64,000 nucleotides of DNA from the IMG/VR virus record IMGVR_UViG_3300042545_001134, positions 1 through 64,000 of that record; one strand, 5' to 3'. Below the pieces are notes generated by a model, which saw only the letters and a list, made by a program, of their open reading frames with translations, did not search any database and had not been told where the DNA came from. The translations under genes and the position numbers were made by a program. Positions 1-64,000 of this stretch are shown one piece after another. The first letter of the stretch is position 1. The number at the start of each line of letters is the position of its first letter.

Positions 1-2
1 TT

Positions 3-140
3 GAAACACCTAACGGAGATTGGGACTTTATTGATAAAATGTACTTCAAGGGTAAAGAACTTCAGATGGACTTTAACCACCAAGAAACTCGAGGTAAGGC
101 ATTAACAATAGAACTTTGGACATTAGAGAATACCAAATAA
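3..140 (+). CDS. 3' end of a CDS entering from the left edge (hypothetical)
   Basis: Open frame from base 3 (ETPNGDWDF...LENTK) to TAA at 138-140. Confidence 0.6.
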   Translation, partial: ETPNGDWDFIDKMYFKGKELQMDFNHQETRGKALTIELWTLENTK

Positions 141-148
141 TTCTTTAA

Positions 149-222
149 GGACCCTTAGCTCAGTTGGTTAGAGCAACTGACTCATAATCAGTAGGTCACA
201 GGTTCGAGCCCTGTAGGGTCCA
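149..222 (+). tRNA. tRNA with CAT anticodon, most like tRNA-Ile2 (lysidine type)
   Basis: Acceptor GGACCCT/AGGGTCC, anticodon arm ACTGA-CTCATAA-TCAGT, T-loop GGTTCGAGCC. Confidence 0.9.
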
Positions 223-226
223 CACA

Positions 227-355
227 TGTGGTCGTACACTTAACTCCAATACCCGAAAGGGAAATCGTTATGTGAAGGCCACTCCCCTTGGTAGACCTTA
301 AAAAGGGCCCTTCCGTTGGTACGACAACGGCTCGCTGGGCCCGGGTCTACTTTTT
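227..355 (+). ncRNA. Candidate structured RNA(s) inside the tRNA cluster
   Basis: GC-rich nested stems GTGGTC/GGCCAC, CCC-GAAA-GGG, GTAGACC/GGTCTAC, GGGCCC/GGGCCC, CCGTTG/CAACGG, then a T-run. Confidence 0.45.
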
Positions 356-427
356 GCGAATATCGTATAGTGGTTATTACTCCATCCTTCCAAGTTGGAG
401 ACGACAGTTCGATTCTGTCTATTCGCT
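356..427 (+). tRNA. tRNA-Gly(TCC)
   Basis: Acceptor GCGAATA/TATTCGC, anticodon loop CTTCCAA, T-loop GTTCGATTC. Confidence 0.9.
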
Positions 428-432
428 CATAT

Positions 433-503
433 TATCCTCTCGTCTAATGGCAGGACCTCAGATTTTGATTCTGATTGTCGAGGTTCGAATCCTCGGGGGA
501 TAA
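433..503 (+). tRNA. tRNA-Gln(TTG)
   Basis: Acceptor TATCCTC/GGGGATA, anticodon arm TCAGA-TTTTGAT-TCTGA, T-arm CGAGG-TTCGAAT-CCTCG. Confidence 0.9.
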
Positions 504-516
504 CTAAAAACACAAT

Positions 517-605
517 GGAAGGTTACCCAAGTTGGTGAAGGGGGCAGTTTGCTAAATTGTTAGGGTGTCACAGCCGCGAGGGTTCGAGCCCCTCACCTTC
601 CGCCA
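517..605 (+). tRNA. tRNA-Ser(GCT)
   Basis: Acceptor GGAAGGT/ACCTTCC, loop TTGCTAA, long variable arm, encoded CCA. Confidence 0.92.
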
Positions 606-1689: not shown

Positions 1690-3762
1690 ATGACGACAAG
1701 AAATTTAGTTTCCTTTCAGAAGGGTTTGGTATGTTCACCAAACGACGGTCAAGATAATAGAATCGCAGTGGCGACCGTTCAATCTCACTTAATGGAGTGG
1801 GGTTATATGTTAGACGAAGATGCATTCTTCGCATTATCCAAATCAGATTTATCGTTCATAGAGAACTTCAACAACGAAGTCGTTACACATTTGAAAAATG
1901 TAATGGGAGGTAATCGTAATTACCAACCTTTATATAAAAACTTCCCACAAGAAGTTATGTCAATGTCTGATTTCGAATTGTATATTAATGCAATTACCCA
2001 CTATTGGAGTAACGGTACTTGGGAACCATCTACCCATACTTTTGAAAAAGAAATCAAGTTTGAGAAAATCAAATACAACTTGATTAAGTATGGCACATCG
2101 GAAAGATTTTCACAAATCTTCACTGATTTGGTTTCAATTAATACATCATTGACACCTCAAGACCTTGAGATTGTTAAATGGTTCGTTAACAGTGGTGAAA
2201 CATTAGTATTCCCTAATACAATTCCATTCAAAGAGAATTTGTGTACATTGGCGGCAATGGGAATTGAGGGATTACCAGTTAAGACATCAACTGACGTGTT
2301 AAGAATCGCCGTTCATCTTTCAGGTGGAGACATCAGTTTACCTAAAGTTCCTGAAAAGGAAATTAGATTAAACAGATGGTCATCTGCAAAGGGTGAGAAC
2401 CCTGAAAGAGAAAAGTTTAAATTCAAGAAGTTCACTCGTAAAGAGAGACGTTACATCTTGGGTTTACTTGAGAACACAAACTGTGACCCACGTGAAATGG
2501 TTTTAAAAGACCAACGTTGGATTCGTTTAGGTGAAATATTACATCCAGGTGAATATAAAAATCAATTCCCAAAATCTTTTGATGCATTCAATAAGATTAG
2601 AAACGAGAAAGTAAAATCTTGGTTCTCACTTGTTAATGAAGGTTTCAATAAAGGTCTTGAGAATGGTTTGAGAGTATTGTCTCAAAAACCCGGTGAATTC
2701 GCAAGAAGAATCGATTGGTTGGTTCGTACATATCCAAAAGATATCGAAGTAATCATGACACACTTCAGCGAAACGGTAAAAGGTACATCGAACAAAGTAT
2801 TGTTTGAAGTTTACGCTCACTTTGAAAATCGTACTGAACCTATGGATAATAGGTCCGTTATGATAAAGGGGTCAAGAAAACGTACCATGTTACCATCACT
2901 ACCAGCAATCCCTAAAGAGATTGTGGAAACCATCCACTCTAAATTATTTGAAACACTTAGAGATAAGTTTTCAGTAATGGATTCTTTGGGTAACTGTTGG
3001 ATTGATGAGGAATTGAAAAAGATTCCTTTACCAACCAACATGAGAAGTATGAACTTTTCAACTAAACCAACAATCAGAGGTCAAAGAGTTCCACTCGATA
3101 ACCCTGATGCAAAAGTTATCAGACCTTTCATTCATTGGATGGATAAACATGGTAGTGAAGATTTGGATTTAAGTGTTACGTTTGTTGGTGAAAAAGTGTC
3201 AGATGTATTATCTTTCAGTAACTTGAGAGTTGGTGAATCTGTTCACTCGGGGGACGTGAGACACAGACAGGGTCCTTGTGCTGAGTACATCGACATTGAT
3301 ATGGAAGATGCATTGAACCGTGGATACAAATATGTAGTCATTGACGTGAGAAACTTCAATGGTGGTAGTTTGAATTCACTTGAAACATCTTTTGGTATCA
3401 TGGAGAGAGAACACCCCGAATCAAATAAAACATGGTTACCTGAGACAATTTCAAATTGTCAATCATTGGGGTCAACGTCGTCAAACACTTTGATTTCAAT
3501 CATTGACCTTGAAACCAAGGAGTATATCATGTTGGATATAGATTCAGAAGGTTTTGTAACCGCAAGAAGTGACTTCAAAAACACCCTTAAAGTAATTCAA
3601 CAATACGCTGAGTTACCAAAAGTAAGTGTTTACGACCTTATTCTTCTACACGTAGAAGGAAGAGGTAAACAAGTTACCCTTGACGAGAATGTGGATACAC
3701 ATTTTAAGTACGAGGACTTCTGTTACTCTTATGAAGAGACAGGAAAATTGATGGGTGTGTAA
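1690..3762 (+). CDS. Large helical-repeat protein with C-terminal TerD-like domain (resembles the MXAN_6230/SCO0854-type family)
   Basis: KPGEFARRIDWLVR, DLDLSVTF, HSGDVRH..AEYIDID motifs; family assignment from memory. Confidence 0.6.
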   Translation: MTTRNLVSFQKGLVCSPNDGQDNRIAVATVQSHLMEWGYMLDEDAFFALSKSDLSFIENFNNEVVTHLKNVMGGNRNYQPLYKNFPQEVMSMSDFELYINAITHYWSNGTWEPSTHTFEKEIKFEKIKYNLIKYGTSERFSQIFTDLVSINTSLTPQDLEIVKWFVNSGETLVFPNTIPFKENLCTLAAMGIEGLPVKTSTDVLRIAVHLSGGDISLPKVPEKEIRLNRWSSAKGENPEREKFKFKKFTRKERRYILGLLENTNCDPREMVLKDQRWIRLGEILHPGEYKNQFPKSFDAFNKIRNEKVKSWFSLVNEGFNKGLENGLRVLSQKPGEFARRIDWLVRTYPKDIEVIMTHFSETVKGTSNKVLFEVYAHFENRTEPMDNRSVMIKGSRKRTMLPSLPAIPKEIVETIHSKLFETLRDKFSVMDSLGNCWIDEELKKIPLPTNMRSMNFSTKPTIRGQRVPLDNPDAKVIRPFIHWMDKHGSEDLDLSVTFVGEKVSDVLSFSNLRVGESVHSGDVRHRQGPCAEYIDIDMEDALNRGYKYVVIDVRNFNGGSLNSLETSFGIMEREHPESNKTWLPETISNCQSLGSTSSNTLISIIDLETKEYIMLDIDSEGFVTARSDFKNTLKVIQQYAELPKVSVYDLILLHVEGRGKQVTLDENVDTHFKYEDFCYSYEETGKLMGV

Positions 3763-3789
3763 ATCACCTGTCAGTTCTTTGAAATATTA

Positions 3790-4100
3790 ATGTGGCTATG
3801 TGAGTCACTGAGAGGATAACCTTTACCTATTATAGGTGACCACGTAGTGGTACTATCTTAGGTCTTAGAGAAGGTGAAAGTATCGGTGCAAATGTCTTAC
3901 TTCTAACATACAAAAATCAGATACAACGTTAGACACACAATTCTCCACATAAACTTATTGACGGCTATGTACCGGGTTACTTCTACAAAACAATTGGATG
4001 TTAAACCACCCGTACTCTTTCCGTCTACCTTATTACCGGCTATGAGTGTAGTTACTTCTAAACCTATCTAAATGAAAAAACCACTCGTTCAATTTCCGGT
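3790..4100 (+). ncRNA. Three tandem homologous structured RNA units (GGCTATG...TTACTTCTA)
   Basis: Units at 3790-3950, 3961-4024 and 4035-4100 keep the same loop sequences with different, compensatory stems. Confidence 0.7.
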
Positions 4101-4140
4101 ATATTTTATTAACAATAACAATAATTTAAAAACAACAATT

Positions 4141-4590
4141 ATGACAACATCAAAAACAACAGATGAAAAAGTAAAAGAACTATTCGACTTAGTTCAATCA
4201 AAAAAATTAGCAATTGAAAAGGCTGAAAGACCTTGCTGGAAAACAAGTGGTAATTTCGGTTACTCAGCAAATTCAGCACATGACAGAACGTCTATCCCAA
4301 CGGTAACAGACACTCGTAAAATCGTTGAAATGTTCGCATTTCTAATCGATAGAAAAGATAAATCTGAATCTGCAGCAAAAGAACTTGGTGTGGACTATAA
4401 TTTTACTTGGTTAGGATTCGGTGTTGATGAGTGGAAAGAAGATTTTCAAACTCGTGTAAACCAAATCTCAGTCCAAGAAAAACGTAAGGAACTTGCCGAA
4501 TTAGAATCTCGTTTGAATGCAATTATCTCACCTGAGTTAAAGGCACAAATGGAACTTGAGGCAATCGCCAAACTTTTAGAGAATAACTAA
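4141..4590 (+). CDS. Hypothetical coiled-coil protein
   Basis: ORF 4072..4590; likely start MTTSK at 4141 after an A-rich leader. Confidence 0.8.
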   Translation: MTTSKTTDEKVKELFDLVQSKKLAIEKAERPCWKTSGNFGYSANSAHDRTSIPTVTDTRKIVEMFAFLIDRKDKSESAAKELGVDYNFTWLGFGVDEWKEDFQTRVNQISVQEKRKELAELESRLNAIISPELKAQMELEAIAKLLENN

Positions 4591-6415: not shown

Positions 6416-6450
6416 AAAAGTTTACTTACCTTTGTATCGTAATATACAAT

Positions 6451-6857
6451 GGGGATGAATGGAATTGATTGGCGTTGGTATTGTACGTGGGCACGTAGTC
6501 GGATGTCATCTACGACTTAAATAAATGGTGGTAACAATTAGACGGCAACGTTTACAACAACATGGAAGTAGCTGGTTTACTAGCAACTTCTAAGGTGGCA
6601 GCCTAACCGCTCCCACTGGACGGGTCGATGGACATATAACCTTGGAACAGAAGTCCTCACGGTGTGGTACCTACCCAAAAAGGTACAAATGGTCTCGTTC
6701 AGAGTGCTACCATAAAAAAAGTGAACTCGACACAGTTTCTGATAACGATGTCAAAATAGGAATCAGATATTTGTCGGTTGTGAATAATCGAATAAACGTG
6801 TAGTCCATTTATGGTATGGCGAACAAGACGAGGGTTCAAATCCCTCCATCTCCACCA
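6451..6857 (+). ncRNA. ssrA: tmRNA; tag (A)GNVYNNMEVAGLLATSKVAA
   Basis: 5' GGGGATGAATGG, 3' T-arm GGTTCAAATCC and acceptor CATCTCCACCA, tag ORF 6544-6606, TACCTTTG promoter upstream. Confidence 0.95.
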
Positions 6858-6863
6858 AAAAAG

Positions 6864-6888
6864 AAACCCCTCAAAAGAGGGGTTTTTT
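6864..6888 (+). terminator. Terminator after ssrA
   Basis: AAACCCCTC-AAAA-GAGGGGTTTTTT. Confidence 0.8.
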
Positions 6889-59120: not shown

Positions 59121-59337
59121 CCCTGATGGACCTGAAGACAGGTGACGATTTTGTTTGGCAGGGATTACCGTCCGACGGGACCTGAGATGGTCGATTTTGT
59201 TTGGCAAGGGTTAACCTTCCTCAGGACGACCCCGGAATCAGGATTTTGTTTGGCAATAGTTTTTTGAAATATTTTGTAACGGGATTTGGAAATGTCAGAT
59301 TTATTGGTTATATTTTATATATAAAACTGATAATATT

Positions 59338-61872: not shown

Positions 61873-61985
61873 AATAAAAAGTATTTAGTGAGTGGGTTAT
61901 TACCCCGAGATTATCTCCTCCTGTTTATTCAGGGAATCACTATGGGTTGTACAACCAACCCCATCACTTGTGGTGATGAAAATAT
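61873..61985 (-). ncRNA. Guide scaffold copy 1 (omegaRNA/sgRNA-like), overlapping the cas 3' end
   Basis: Homologous to 63751-63868; hairpin GGGTTG-GTTGTA-CAACCC on the minus strand. Confidence 0.7.
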
Positions 61986-63327
61986 CTTGTTTTTTCTGTA
62001 GACCTTTTAATAGTCTACCTTTCTTACTCTTACCTTTTACTTCGTTACCTTCAGCGTAAGTTATATTATATGCCCCAACAATATCGGCATCCTTTAGTTT
62101 ACCGTAATCGTCACACTCAATGTTAATACAGGTGAATTTGGTTTTATCCTTATCCTTTCTATTCTCCTTATCCACATTCTTACAAGTTGGACATGTAATA
62201 GATGTATCTTTTGGATTCACCCACAGGATTTGAATCCCCACCATCTTTGCTTTATATTCAATATCCGTTTGAAGTTGATAATATGCCCACGATTTTAAAA
62301 ACAAATCTTTAGTGTTTGTGGTTATACCAGTTAAGTCCTCCATCTTAATAATACCCACATTGTATTGTTGGGCAATATCAATAACATCCCTACTGATATC
62401 GTGATTCATTAACACGGACCAATTGTGTTCCTTTTCCTTTAATCTTTCCATTCCCAACATCTTTCTTGTTCTTCCATGTCCACCCTTGGCAAACTTCATG
62501 GATTGTTGAAGTGCTCTTCGTATCTTATAGAACTTCATTCTCTCAGTTTGAATCTTTTCACCGATTGAAATCTGTGATGGTTGATGTTTCTCCCCGTCAA
62601 TGTATATTGATACTGGTCTGTTTATACCCAAATCAATTCCCATTACCTTATCAGGAATCATATCCTTTGATTTTGTATCAGGTACTGTACATGTTAATAA
62701 TAAAATAAAATCTTCATCCTTAATTTGAATAGAACTGGTGTTCATTTTGTATTCACCATTCAATATTCTATTGACAATTTTTTCATTACCACTTCTATCC
62801 CTTCCGTAATGTAATTTGAATTTAATTCCTTTGTGAATACTTCTCTCTGATGACGATAATGGTAAGTTAAAAACATAATCCTCCCCTTCTTTACTCACCA
62901 CAGGTTCTTTATTTACCGTACCTTTAAATGGTATTGTTAATGATGTTTTTCTAAATGATGGTATTGACATCTTTCCTTGTAAAATATCATAAAAACTCTC
63001 ATCAATAGTTTTATATATCTTTTGACAAAACGACGATTTTATGTTCGATGATATGATGGTATTTTTCTTCATTAAGTTATAACCCATATTCTCCACCATC
63101 GCCCCGTATTTTTCCTTGAAAATCTCTTTTGATTTAACTTTAGTAATATTAGTTGAATTTTTTATCTCATCCAACTCGTACTGGTTACAAACAGTTAACC
63201 TAATAACTTCGTTTCCAATTTGAACCAAGTCAGATGCAATTCTTTTTACGTAATTGTACGATGCAGTTCTGTCCTTGCTGGTTTCACCAACCGCAATCAA
63301 TTTGATTTTTCTTGTGATTATTGACAT
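61900..63327 (-). CDS. cas12f: Compact type V effector, Cas12f (Cas14)/TnpB-derived RNA-guided nuclease, 475 aa
   Basis: RuvC-I VMGIDLG, GGHGRTRK, RuvC-II KMEDL, W.YYQLQ..IEYKA, Zn finger CPTC..C...EC, RuvC-III DADIVGAYNI; adjacent array. Confidence 0.85.
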   Translation of the reverse strand: MSIITRKIKLIAVGETSKDRTASYNYVKRIASDLVQIGNEVIRLTVCNQYELDEIKNSTNITKVKSKEIFKEKYGAMVENMGYNLMKKNTIISSNIKSSFCQKIYKTIDESFYDILQGKMSIPSFRKTSLTIPFKGTVNKEPVVSKEGEDYVFNLPLSSSERSIHKGIKFKLHYGRDRSGNEKIVNRILNGEYKMNTSSIQIKDEDFILLLTCTVPDTKSKDMIPDKVMGIDLGINRPVSIYIDGEKHQPSQISIGEKIQTERMKFYKIRRALQQSMKFAKGGHGRTRKMLGMERLKEKEHNWSVLMNHDISRDVIDIAQQYNVGIIKMEDLTGITTNTKDLFLKSWAYYQLQTDIEYKAKMVGIQILWVNPKDTSITCPTCKNVDKENRKDKDKTKFTCINIECDDYGKLKDADIVGAYNITYAEGNEVKGKSKKGRLLKGLQKKQDIFITTSDGVGCTTHSDSLNKQEEIISG

Positions 63328-63351
63328 ATCATGTTCTATTTTATGTTCATC

Positions 63352-63692
63352 GTTATATTAAAAACTTCAAGTAAGAGGTATTTACAACATAAATCCCATT
63401 AGTTCGTATGGGTTCGTAGTTGTATACACCTTTCAAATAAGAGGTATTTACAACGTACTTGATGACCTGCAACAGGTCCATCAGTTGTATACACCTTTCA
63501 AATAAGAGAAACCCAAAGTACATGTTGTATACACCTTTCAAATAAGAGGTATTTACAACGTTTTCTCTTTCCCATGAGGTGCATCACCTGTTGTATACAC
63601 CTTTCAAATAAGAGGCATTTACAACTATTAACGGATGTACCAAAAATTAACATATAGTTGTATACACCTTTCAAATAAGAGGCATTTACAAC
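63352..63692 (-). CRISPR. CRISPR array, 36-bp repeat GTTGTAAATACCTCTTATTTGAAAGGTGTATACAAC (minus strand), 6 repeat units, 29-31-nt spacers
   Basis: Plus-strand repeats at 63352 (degenerate), 63419, 63484 (truncated to 25 bp), 63524, 63590, 63657. Confidence 0.95.
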
Positions 63693-63750
63693 ATGGTTAA
63701 CCCCATCTTATTATGAATCAACATATTGTGAATGATTCCCTTATTAAAAA

Positions 63751-63895
63751 ATAAAAGGTATTTAGTGAGTGAGAAGTTAATCTCCAGAAAAATTCCATCC
63801 TGTTTATTCAGGATTCACTATGGGCTGTACAACCAGCCCCACCAAAGTTTTACCTCTGATGAAAATATATTGAAGTTTCCAATATTTCAAAGAAC
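63751..63895 (-). ncRNA. tracrRNA-like scaffold copy 2
   Basis: Hairpin GGGCTG-GTTGTA-CAGCCC with loop complementary to the repeat 3' end; anti-repeat TAAATACCTTTT. Confidence 0.75.
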
Positions 63896-63899
63896 AATA

Positions 63900-63930
63900 C
63901 AAAGATACGTGTATTTTTTAGATATCCAAA
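63900..63930 (-). promoter_or_regulatory. Bacteroidota sigma70 promoter driving tracr-array-cas
   Basis: Minus strand TTTG-N19-TATCTTTG. Confidence 0.8.
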
Positions 63931-64000
63931 TTTTTTTTTAAAAATATTTTTTTATTCATCATCCTCCAACGAATCACTGTATGTGGGTTTATCCTTTGGG

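What the first reader, a model, noticed from the sequence alone, without database searches (positions are those of the whole stretch)
3774..3788. Identical 15-bp boxA-like element heads both ncRNA-rich transcripts
Seen: GTTCTTTGAAATATT lies at 3774-3788 (+), just before the RNA triplet, and at 63895-63881 (-), just after the promoter of the tracr-CRISPR transcript. Established: boxA (GTTCTTTGA-like in many rrn leaders) recruits NusB/NusE antitermination, and boxA-dependent antitermination of CRISPR arrays has been described in proteobacteria. Inference: the phage uses host Nus factors to transcribe untranslated RNA tracts.
Basis: partly seen in the sequence, partly recalled or inferred. Interest (0 to 1): 0.6.

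Follow-up and report, generated by a model that had tools for sequence, protein, structure and literature searches.

The report
Host rRNA boxA heads phage RNAs
A 310-kb freshwater phage of Bacteroidota places exact copies of its host phylum's ribosomal-RNA "boxA" signal in front of its tRNA arrays, its CRISPR-Cas12f-like operon and a cluster of unnamed small RNAs, which suggests it borrows the host's rRNA antitermination machinery to transcribe long untranslated RNAs.

Summary
GTTCTTTGAAATATT lies at 3774-3788(+) and 63881-63895(-), and these are its only two exact copies in the 310,691-bp phage record. Identity alone means little, because about 22 15-mers recur by chance in a simulated 64-kb window. 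The weight comes from what the sequence is. Its core GTTCTTTGA is the conserved box of Bacteroidota rrn operons. It occurs in 36 of 55 sampled 16S leaders on the sense strand and in 0 of 55 on the antisense strand. It also occurs in 20 of 20 sampled 16S-23S spacers after tRNA-Ala. The exact 15-mer sits upstream of 16S in Chitinophagales and Mucilaginibacter genomes. In the phage, 6 of the 14 core copies lie on the sense strand of the 1.5% of strand positions that is ncRNA (P about 3e-8). Four of them are in the tRNA array outside the window. Three boxes follow a Bacteroidota -7 promoter box by 4-7 nt. Related phages put the box before tRNA clusters, tmRNA and a GOLLD RNA. The phage encodes no NusB, NusG or S10, while all 81 sampled Bacteroidota genomes encode NusB and Rho. 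Identity as an rrn-type boxA copy is well supported. Nus-dependent antitermination is inferred, not tested.

The parts
3774..3788 (+). boxA-like element of the rrn-leader type (GTTCTTTGAAATATT). It begins 11 nt after the stop of ORF 1690-3762 and has no promoter of its own.
   Evidence: The core is kept in 15 of 24 related phages while the flanks vary. A metatranscriptome contig spans 3568-4027.
1690..3762 (+). Upstream ORF of 690 aa with no Pfam match. Its transcript would carry the box at site 1.
3791..3949 (+). RNA unit 1, the long form of the GGCUAUG...UUACUUCUA family. Closing stem is TGTGG/CCACA.
   Evidence: Metatranscriptome contig depth is 60 at 3846-3994 against 6.7 on the ORF in run X3.
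3960..4025 (+). RNA unit 2, short form. Closing stem is GACGG/CCGTC.
4035..4100 (+). RNA unit 3, short form. Closing stem is ACCGG/CCGGT. It overlaps the first ATG (4072) of the listed ORF 4072-4590, whose real start may be the ATG at 4132.
63900..63930 (-). Bacteroidota-type promoter: TTTG (63930-63927), 19 nt, TATCTTTG (63907-63900).
   Evidence: The full promoter motif occurs 42 times in the genome against 13 for the pattern read backwards.
63881..63895 (-). boxA-like element of the leader type, beginning 4 nt after the -7 box. It would lie at or within a few nucleotides of the 5' end of the transcript.
   Evidence: best matrix hit in the genome, 21.3 bits. It is kept exactly in related phage L005 despite a 3-nt indel between promoter and box.
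63713..63880 (-). Conserved leader, probably a tracr-like RNA. Segment 63762-63724 can pair with the CRISPR repeat.
   Evidence: Duplex of -21.7 kcal/mol. The leader is almost identical in L005. A weak terminator-like hairpin lies at 63814-63797.
63353..63692 (-). CRISPR array: five 36-nt repeats (the last one degenerate) plus one repeat truncated at its 5' end.
61900..63327 (-). Cas12f/TnpB-like effector gene (475 aa). It lies directly downstream of the array on the same strand, with no promoter motif or terminator-like site between them.
   Evidence: Pfam Cas12f1-like_TNB, 1.4e-14..
149..605 (+). Four tRNA genes on the + strand, like the 21 tRNA genes at genome 303528-310632. That larger array holds four more boxes, at 303607, 304978, 305455 and 306594, all outside the window.
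6427..6857 (+). tmRNA (6451-6857) with its own -7 promoter box (6427-6434) but no boxA. Relatives G159 and G160 do have a box here.
59259..59273 (+). One-mismatch copy (GTTTTTTGAAATATT) that has lost the C aligning with the critical C5. It scores low (12.3 bits) and is probably not a working box.

Best explanation
The 15-mer is a phage-borne copy of the rrn-type boxA of Bacteroidota.

Proposed mechanism: host RNA polymerase starts at Bacteroidota sigma-A promoters, or reads in from an upstream gene or tRNA. As soon as GUUCUUUGA emerges in the nascent RNA, the host NusB-S10(NusE) dimer binds it. Together with NusG and NusA it converts the polymerase into the Rho-resistant, processive form used for rRNA. 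That form carries transcription through long untranslated stretches:
- the tRNA array of about 7 kb;
- the roughly 540 nt of leader and CRISPR array that precede the Cas12f-like ORF;
- the roughly 300 nt of small RNAs between ORF 1690-3762 and the next ORF.

Shown here: sequence identity with the host rrn leader and spacer boxes; strand-specific enrichment at phage ncRNA operons; recurrence in relatives and in unrelated phages; no phage-encoded Nus factors; NusB and Rho present in every sampled Bacteroidota genome.

Inferred, not shown: NusB-S10 binding, the role of Rho, and any effect on read-through.
For: (a) Host rrn identity. GTTCTTTGA is exact in 36 of 55 Bacteroidota 16S leaders on the sense strand and 0 of 55 on the antisense strand. 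All 20 of 20 16S-23S spacers carry GTTCTTTGA followed by cat(a/g)(t/g)tg after tRNA-Ala. A box in both the leader and the spacer is the arrangement known for E. coli boxA (PMC13753749). The exact 15-mer lies 68-178 nt before 16S in L051, L053 and L114 and at 7 rrn leaders of Mucilaginibacter flavidus.

(b) Published boxA sequences. The positions reported as critical in E. coli and lambda (G2, C5, U6; PMC3177189) are kept. The box differs at one position from the B. subtilis box shown by NMR to bind NusB (AUGAUCUUUGAAA; PMC13753749). It also differs at one position from the M. xanthus CRISPR/rrn box GCTCTTTGAAA (bioRxiv 10.64898/2026.07.09.737519).

(c) Phage-wide pattern. Six of 14 core copies lie on the sense strand of 9.3 kb of ncRNA territory, which is 1.5% of strand positions, and none on its antisense strand. 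Binomial P is 3e-8 and the Markov expectation is 0.07. Six of the top 7 matrix hits are these sites.

(d) Variable context. The box follows a -7 promoter box by 4-7 nt at three sites. It follows a tRNA at two sites and an ORF at one, with no promoter. This fits an RNA element, not a promoter element.

(e) Evolution. Five relatives have gained a promoter before the box at site 1 and kept the box. Relatives carry boxes before tRNA clusters, tmRNA and GOLLD RNA. The phage tRNA-Ala is only 57-66% identical to host spacer tRNA-Ala, yet the box 5 nt after it is exact.

(f) IMG/VR-wide. Of 118 matches to the 16-mer pattern, 29 have a co-oriented tRNA within 300 nt downstream and 1 has an antisense tRNA. 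Background is 0.068 and P is 1e-9.

(g) Factors. No NusB, NusG or S10 in the phage. NusB in 81 of 81 and Rho in 81 of 81 sampled Bacteroidota.

(h) Need. There is no promoter motif or terminator-like site between the array and the effector gene, nor a + strand terminator-like site between the RNA units and the next ORF, so the downstream ORFs depend on read-through.
Against: - I found no experiment showing that this box binds NusB or blocks Rho in any Bacteroidota. Function is carried over from E. coli, Salmonella, Vibrio, Legionella and B. subtilis.
- The box is dispensable in places. The phage's own tmRNA has a promoter but no box. Relatives L206-L208 lack it before the long RNA unit, and L203 and L205 have one-mismatch versions.
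- In host rrn leaders the box lies 21-200 nt after the nearest -7 box. In the phage it can follow by only 4-7 nt, an arrangement not seen in the hosts sampled.
- The CRISPR array is short (about 340 nt), so the need for antitermination there is modest.
- As far as I know, tRNA operons outside rrn are not known to use boxA in E. coli (my own knowledge).
- BoxA can also promote Rho termination in some contexts, such as suhB and hisG (PMC5725501, PMC12360218).
- The metatranscriptome data are contigs, which cannot show starts, strand or a single transcript.
Confidence: 0.65

Rival explanations
1. The box does recruit the Nus complex, but the benefit is co-transcriptional folding and processing of structured RNAs (tRNA precursors, tracr/crRNA, GOLLD, the GGCUAUG units), not protection from Rho. 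Such a chaperone role has been proposed for rRNA.
For: Nus factors with SuhB are reported to aid 30S biogenesis and rRNA folding (PMC4807359, PMC10250234). Everything headed by the box here is highly structured RNA. Several boxes sit only about 10-30 nt before a tRNA.
Against: The two roles are not exclusive. At site 1 and in the CRISPR operon, protein genes lie downstream of the untranslated stretch with no promoter motif between, which fits suppression of polarity. Nothing here separates the two roles.
Confidence: 0.15
2. It is a promoter-proximal DNA or initially transcribed element of strong stable-RNA promoters in Bacteroidota, for example a target of growth-rate control, and not an RNA signal for Nus factors.
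For: At 63895(-), 304978(+) and 306594(+), and in several relatives and unrelated phages, the box begins 4-8 nt after TAnnTTTG.
Against: Three phage boxes follow a tRNA or a stop codon with no promoter. In host rrn leaders the distance to the nearest -7 box is 21-200 nt, and 16 of 46 leaders have none within the stretch read. All 20 spacer boxes lie deep inside the operon.
Confidence: 0.07
3. The boxes are passive passengers or chance matches: remnants of host rrn fragments, such as tRNA-Ala plus spacer, picked up with tRNA genes and doing nothing in the phage.
For: One box lies 5 nt after a tRNA-Ala(TGC), as in host spacers. Repeated 15-mers are common by chance. Eight of 14 core copies are clearly chance hits inside or antisense to genes.
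Against: The phage tRNA-Ala is only 57-66% identical to host spacer tRNA-Ala, while the box is exact. Boxes also head RNAs with no rrn counterpart: CRISPR leader, GGCUAUG units, GOLLD, tmRNA. The core is invariant while flanks diverge. Enrichment is strand-specific.
Confidence: 0.05
4. The box acts negatively. As at E. coli suhB, the NusB-S10 complex on the box promotes Rho termination or blocks translation, which would limit expression of what follows.
For: BoxA-dependent repression of suhB and enhancement of termination in hisG are documented (PMC5725501, PMC12360218).
Against: In those cases the box sits next to a ribosome-binding site or inside a gene. Here it sits before tRNAs and other stable RNAs that the phage presumably needs in quantity, and it copies the rrn boxes, which are positive elements.
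Confidence: 0.05

Closest known systems
rrn boxA and the ribosomal antitermination complex (NusB, NusE/S10, NusA, NusG, SuhB, S4) of E. coli
   Same: A short U-rich box in the nascent RNA with G, C and U at the critical positions. It is present in both the leader and the 16S-23S spacer of the host phylum's rrn operons, and it needs no phage protein. The phage copies both the leader type and the spacer type of its host phylum.
   Different: The sequence is GUUCUUUGA rather than GCUCUUUAA. It lies in a phage, before tRNA arrays, a CRISPR-cas operon and other ncRNAs rather than rRNA. It often sits within a few nucleotides of the transcript start. No boxB or boxC partner was looked for. Binding and function are untested in Bacteroidota.
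boxA in the leaders of bacterial CRISPR arrays (Stringer et al. 2020, eLife 9:e58182, as cited in PMC7862264 and bioRxiv 10.64898/2026.07.09.737519)
   Same: The box lies between the promoter and the first repeat, and it is identical to the box of the organism's (here the host's) own 16S leader. The rationale is the same: a long untranslated transcript exposed to Rho.
   Different: Here the array is phage-encoded and short. It is fused to a tracr-like leader and lies upstream of the effector gene, so the box would also serve the effector mRNA. I could not read the original paper (not held), so I cannot say whether phage-borne arrays or Bacteroidota were covered there.
nut-site boxA of lambdoid phages, acting with N protein
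   Same: A phage uses a boxA RNA and host Nus factors to make host polymerase resistant to termination.
   Different: Lambda needs boxB and the phage N protein and acts on mRNA operons. Here I found no phage factor, and NusB, NusG and S10 homologues are absent from the phage. The box is the unmodified host rrn type, and its targets are ncRNA operons.
B. subtilis rrn boxA-like element AUGAUCUUUGAAA (PMC13753749)
   Same: It shares UCUUUGAAA. It has G rather than A at the position where E. coli has A. It binds NusB directly by NMR.
   Different: One position differs in the core (GAUC against GUUC), and the phylum is different.

Membership tests
rrn-type boxA (NusB-NusE binding RNA element) | Sequence fits the boxA consensus, with the critical G, C and U positions kept | tested here: met
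   GUUCUUUGA aligned with E. coli GCUCUUUAA keeps G2, C5 and U6 (positions from PMC3177189). It is one substitution away from the NusB-binding B. subtilis box (PMC13753749) and from the M. xanthus box (bioRxiv 10.64898/2026.07.09.737519).
rrn-type boxA (NusB-NusE binding RNA element) | Same sequence as the box in the host's own rrn leader | tested here: met
   36 of 55 Bacteroidota leaders carry the exact core on the sense strand only. The exact 15-mer lies upstream of 16S in L051, L053, L114 and Mucilaginibacter flavidus. The host species itself is unknown.
rrn-type boxA (NusB-NusE binding RNA element) | A second copy in the 16S-23S spacer of the host rrn operon | tested here: met
   20 of 20 spacers. 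The phage boxes at genome 303607 and 306594 are of this spacer type.
rrn-type boxA (NusB-NusE binding RNA element) | Lies in transcribed, untranslated RNA, on the sense strand, downstream of a promoter | tested here: inconclusive
   Promoter motifs lie directly upstream at three sites, all six boxes point the same way as their ncRNAs, and a metatranscriptome contig spans site 1. Contigs cannot show strand or starts, and no transcription start site was mapped.
rrn-type boxA (NusB-NusE binding RNA element) | Bound by NusB-NusE (S10) | not testable with these tools
   This needs EMSA, ITC or NMR with Bacteroidota proteins. NusB is present in 81 of 81 sampled Bacteroidota. The phage has no NusB, NusG or S10.
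rrn-type boxA (NusB-NusE binding RNA element) | Confers resistance to Rho-dependent termination and raises distal transcription | not testable with these tools
   Rho is present in 81 of 81 sampled Bacteroidota. A functional test needs reporters with box mutants, Rho inhibition or nusB depletion.
CRISPR-leader boxA (as in Salmonella, Vibrio and Legionella str. Lens) | Box lies between the promoter and the first repeat of a CRISPR array, on the array's strand | tested here: met
   Promoter 63930-63900, box 63895-63881, first repeat 63692, all on the - strand. The related phage L005 has the same layout.
lambda-type nut site | boxB hairpin plus a phage N-like protein | not tested
   No N-like protein or boxB was searched for. 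The box works without them in rrn operons, so this family is not the one proposed.

The most novel reading that the evidence does not exclude
A wide range of Bacteroidota phages, not only this clade, may have taken over the host's rRNA antitermination signal as a portable module. The module is often a cassette: a -7 promoter box, 4-8 nt, then GTTCTTTGA. It is placed before any stable-RNA gene, including tRNA arrays, tmRNA, GOLLD, tracr-CRISPR-cas operons and a new GGCUAUG RNA family. Phage ncRNA output would then be tied to, and protected by, the host Nus/Rho system. This would be a general rule for how large phages express untranslated RNA, and it would work without any phage protein.
Probability: 0.45. 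Interest if true: 0.65.

Novelty: new member of a known kind. Interest (0 to 1): 0.55.

Why it matters
- **Large phages and untranslated RNA.** Large phages carry kilobases of untranslated RNA genes. How these escape Rho, which ends untranslated transcription, has hardly been asked. An unmodified host rrn box in front of them gives a simple answer that can be tested.
- **Nus/Rho biology in Bacteroidota.** The result gives a defined RNA (GUUCUUUGA plus flank) and natural test cases for this biology. I found no direct experiment on boxA in this phylum in the papers searched.
- **A practical marker.** The box marks the heads of ncRNA transcription units in Bacteroidota phages. Here it pointed to a tracr-CRISPR-cas operon, a GOLLD RNA and an unnamed RNA family. 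It may also indicate the host phylum, and possibly the host order.
- **Engineering.** For use in Bacteroidota, the promoter-plus-box cassette is a candidate part for expressing guide arrays, as was done with boxA in Legionella (PMC7862264).

Tried and rejected
- **Rfam.** At permissive thresholds on 3600-4200 and 63300-64000 there were only chance-level hits. The RNA units and the leader belong to no Rfam family.
- **Box as a promoter element.** I tested whether the box doubles as a -33 or -7 element for a downstream promoter. Read by eye, the spacing and downstream sequence do not fit.
- **Core copies that are chance hits.** The copies at 72165(+) and 66676(+) looked intergenic or high-scoring, but they are antisense to minus-strand coding sequence. 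The other copies at 75050, 88373, 131861, 169576, 171348, 177853 and 241554 lie inside genes.
- **59259(+).** It has lost the C of the core and scores low, so I do not count it.
- **Other genome hits to the 15-mer.** Some are unrelated: a copy beside what reads as a transposase gene in Bacteroidales, a conserved coding region, and a Chitinophagaceae intergenic element with no rRNA nearby.
- **Host use outside rrn.** In G139, box counts outside rrn equal the reversed-pattern control.
- **CRISPR arrays after the box elsewhere.** None was found downstream of the box in the 116 IMG/VR loci sampled.
- **Inner stem of the RNA units.** My crude complementarity test did not beat its control, so only the closing stem is supported.
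- **Papers not held.** Stringer et al. 2020 and Arnvig et al. 2008 are not held. What I say about them rests on citing papers or on my own memory.
- **Relatives of G000.** The genome search draws no relatives for a virus record, so I reached a Bacteroidota handle through the pattern scan.
- The large protein searches, structure prediction and complex prediction were not needed.

Full report
**1. What the window is**

The window is the first 64 kb of a 310,691-bp IMG/VR virus record. The record is linear, 93% complete by CheckV, and 34.7% G+C.

It is a phage with several RNA genes:
- 25 tRNA genes, all on the + strand, and a tmRNA. Twenty-one of the tRNA genes lie at 303528-310632 and four at 149-605.
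- A CRISPR array next to a 475-aa Cas12f/TnpB-like gene.

Promoter motifs of the Bacteroidota kind (TTTG, 18-20 nt, TAnnTTTG) occur 42 times, against 13 for the same pattern read backwards. Freshwater and lake metatranscriptomes hold parts of the sequence.

**2. The observation**

GTTCTTTGAAATATT is at 3774-3788(+) and 63881-63895(-), exactly as reported. There is no third exact copy in the whole genome. The flanks differ, so this is a 15-nt identity and not part of a longer repeat.

Site 1 begins 11 nt after the stop codon of ORF 1690-3762 and ends 2 nt before the first of three RNA units. Site 2 begins 4 nt after the -7 box of a canonical Bacteroidota promoter: TTTG at 63930-63927, 19 nt, TATCTTTG at 63907-63900. 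It heads a 168-nt conserved leader, the CRISPR array and the effector gene, all on the - strand.

As a bare repeat the pair is unremarkable. Simulated 64-kb windows of the same dinucleotide make-up hold 21.8 +/- 6.0 recurring 15-mers.

**3. What the sequence is**

Among them the 15-mer lay 178, 68 and 88 nt upstream of the 16S 5' end in L051 (Chitinophagales), L053 (a Chitinophaga pinensis MAG) and L114. Infernal confirmed the 16S in two of these. The draft genome of Mucilaginibacter flavidus has seven exact copies. Five sit 47-71 nt from contig ends, the usual mark of multi-copy rrn operons.

I then took an even sample of Bacteroidota genomes, located full-length 16S genes and read 400 nt upstream of 60 of them. 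Fifty-five stretches were long enough to use.
- 36 of the 55 have GTTCTTTGA exactly on the sense strand, and none has it on the antisense strand.
- 46 of the 55 fit a slightly relaxed form.
- The box typically lies 75-150 nt before 16S.

In 20 of 20 complete rrn operons a second copy, GTTCTTTGA followed by cat(a/g)(t/g)tg, lies after tRNA-Ala and about 100 nt before 23S. A short conserved box in both the leader and the spacer is the arrangement known for E. coli boxA (PMC13753749).

The core keeps the G, C and U that are critical in E. coli and lambda (PMC3177189). It differs at one position from the B. subtilis box that binds NusB by NMR (PMC13753749). It also differs at one position from the M. 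xanthus CRISPR/rrn box (bioRxiv 10.64898/2026.07.09.737519).

The element is therefore the rrn boxA of the presumed host phylum. The window's 15-mer is the leader variant.

**4. Where it occurs in the phage**

GTTCTTTGA occurs 14 times on both strands, against about 5 expected. I scored the genome with a matrix built from the host leaders. The seven best hits are:

| Genome position | Strand | Context |
|---|---|---|
| 63880 | - | CRISPR leader |
| 306594 | + | tRNA array |
| 303607 | + | tRNA array |
| 304978 | + | tRNA array |
| 66676 | + | antisense in a gene |
| 3774 | + | before the RNA units |
| 305455 | + | tRNA array |

The boxes at 303607 and 306594 are of the spacer type, down to the ATATTGG and ATGTTGG tails.

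Six of the 14 copies lie on the sense strand of the 9.3 kb of ncRNA territory, which is 1.5% of strand positions, and none on its antisense strand. Binomial P is 3e-8, and the Markov expectation there is 0.07. Rfam finds no other known ncRNA between 76 and 300 kb, so the territory was not drawn to fit.

**5. Architecture**

Three boxes follow a -7 promoter box by 4-7 nt: 63895(-), 304978(+) and 306594(+). Two follow a tRNA, by 5 nt after tRNA-Ala(TGC) and 11 nt after tRNA-Ser. One follows a stop codon.

In host leaders the nearest -7 box is 21-200 nt away. The variable context argues for an element read in the RNA rather than a promoter part. The very short distance to the promoter is a phage peculiarity.

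There is no promoter motif or terminator-like site between the array and the effector ORF. There is also no + strand terminator-like site between the RNA units and the next ORF. In both places a protein gene therefore lies behind several hundred untranslated nucleotides. That is the situation in which Rho causes polarity.

**6. Relatives**

- **CRISPR locus.** The one related locus found (L005, effector 76% identical) keeps the 15-mer exactly, although the promoter differs and 3 nt have been inserted between promoter and box.
- **Site 1.** Of 24 related loci with the 690-aa ORF, 15 keep the exact core within 120 nt after it, while the few bases before it vary. In five of these a full promoter has appeared directly upstream (TATCTTTG, taat, box), the same cassette as at the CRISPR leader. 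More distant relatives have a one-mismatch box before the long RNA unit (L203, L205) or none (L206-L208).
- **Other RNAs.** Four related records carry co-oriented boxes at the heads of tRNA clusters. Two carry one between a promoter and what reads as the tmRNA 5' end, where our phage has a promoter only. One relative has two tandem promoter-box cassettes, and the second heads a GOLLD RNA (RF02032, 325 bits).
- **tRNA-Ala.** The phage tRNA-Ala is only 57-66% identical to host spacer tRNA-Ala, yet the box after it is exact. The box is therefore kept by selection and not by recent capture.

**7. Beyond the clade**

Twenty-nine have a co-oriented tRNA starting within 300 nt downstream, eight have one only upstream, and one has an antisense tRNA. 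The background in the same tRNA-rich loci is 0.068, giving P of 1e-9. Many of these show the order terminator, promoter, box, tRNA. Several other matches look like host rrn spacers inside contigs that IMG/VR files as viral.

**8. Factors**

The phage has no match to NusB, NusG or S10. NusB and Rho are present in 81 of 81 sampled Bacteroidota genomes. The boxes sit behind host-type promoters, so the polymerase concerned is the host's.

**9. Expression**

Only assembled contigs were available, so starts, strand and levels cannot be read.
- One freshwater metatranscriptome contig runs from 3568 to 4027, covering the ORF end, the box and RNA units 1-2.
- Another covers 3841-4039 without a mismatch.
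- In run X3 the contig over unit 1 has depth 60, against 6.7 for the contig over the ORF.
- tmRNA-like contigs are far deeper.

This is compatible with co-transcription but does not prove it. DNA carry-over cannot be excluded.

**10. What lies behind the boxes in the window**

The leader segment 63762-63724 can pair with the repeat (-21.7 kcal/mol), which fits a tracr-like RNA fused to the array transcript.

The three units at 3791-4100 belong to a family with the conserved strings GGCUAUG and UUACUUCUA and a closing stem NNNGG/CCNNN. Across 50 distinct units from relatives, the three variable outer pairs are fully complementary in 43. The figure is 21% when the 3' ends are permuted, and each position shows three or four different Watson-Crick pair types. 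They are real structured RNAs, and Rfam does not know them.

**11. Interpretation**

The identity of the element as a copy of the host rrn boxA is as firm as sequence analysis allows. Its function in the phage is inferred: recruitment of host NusB-S10 to make the polymerase processive and resistant to Rho over untranslated operons. That inference rests on three things:
- homology to tested systems;
- the strand-specific association with ncRNA;
- the position in front of protein genes that need read-through.

The main alternative is that the same complex chiefly helps RNA folding and processing. A promoter element, a passive remnant and a negative role are less likely (see the rival explanations).

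**12. Novelty**

BoxA-Nus antitermination of rRNA, of lambdoid phage operons with N, and of bacterial CRISPR arrays is known. I found no report in the held library of rrn-type boxes before phage tRNA arrays, phage CRISPR operons, GOLLD or tmRNA, or of boxA function in Bacteroidota. The two most relevant papers could not be read, so prior mention cannot be excluded. I file the finding as a new member of a known kind.

Noticed in passing
window 3791-4100 (+); relatives L191-L214: A family of tandem small RNAs of about 63-98 nt (long form about 160 nt). They share the conserved strings GGCUAUG and UUACUUCUA and a covarying closing stem NNNGG/CCNNN. There are 50 distinct units in 25 phages, and the closing stem is fully paired in 43 of 50, against 21% in the permuted control. 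Some units carry a T-arm-like GGTTCGAATCC. There is no Rfam match. Function is unknown.
   Followed up: partly
window 6451-6857 (+): A phage tmRNA with an unusual 20-residue tag (GNVYNNMEVAGLLATSKVAA). It has its own promoter and a strong terminator at 6861-6888. Contigs of it and of variants are the deepest in four freshwater metatranscriptomes (depth up to about 550).
   Followed up: partly
genome 306810-306872 (+) = L189:6810-6872: A freshwater-1 RNA (RF02979, 73.4 bits, just over its gathering score of 72) lies inside the tRNA array, in the unit headed by the box at 306594.
   Followed up: no
L246:433-839 (-) and upstream to 1560, in related phage G160: A GOLLD RNA (RF02032, 325 bits) is preceded by a promoter-plus-box cassette. 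A near-identical copy of the cassette about 240 nt upstream heads another noncoding stretch of about 170 nt. blastn finds no counterpart in the window's phage.
   Followed up: partly
genome 64240-64360 (-) = L190:240-360, just outside the window: A 121-nt match to the tRNA model (37 bits) that aragorn did not call. It may be an intron-containing or aberrant tRNA. It lies directly upstream of the CRISPR promoter on the same strand.
   Followed up: no
window 63353-63692 (-): The CRISPR array holds one repeat truncated at its 5' end (about 63520-63495), joined to the preceding spacer. The last repeat is degenerate. The array lies upstream of the effector gene, not downstream.
   Followed up: no
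window 1-148 and genome 310560-310691: The + strand tRNA genes reach both ends of the linear record (303528-310632 and 149-605). The two ends may therefore be neighbours in the real genome. The window starts inside the 3' end of an ORF.
   Followed up: no
L268, L269, L271, L280, L285, L286 (Bacteroidota 16S-23S spacers): Some Bacteroidota spacers carry a further box-like element, exact or with one mismatch, between the 16S 3' end and tRNA-Ile. These operons then have three boxes.
   Followed up: no
L014, L018, L042, L071, L084 (Bacteroidales): The exact 15-mer also occurs in a conserved context upstream of an ORF that reads like a transposase, apparently unrelated to rrn.
   Followed up: partly
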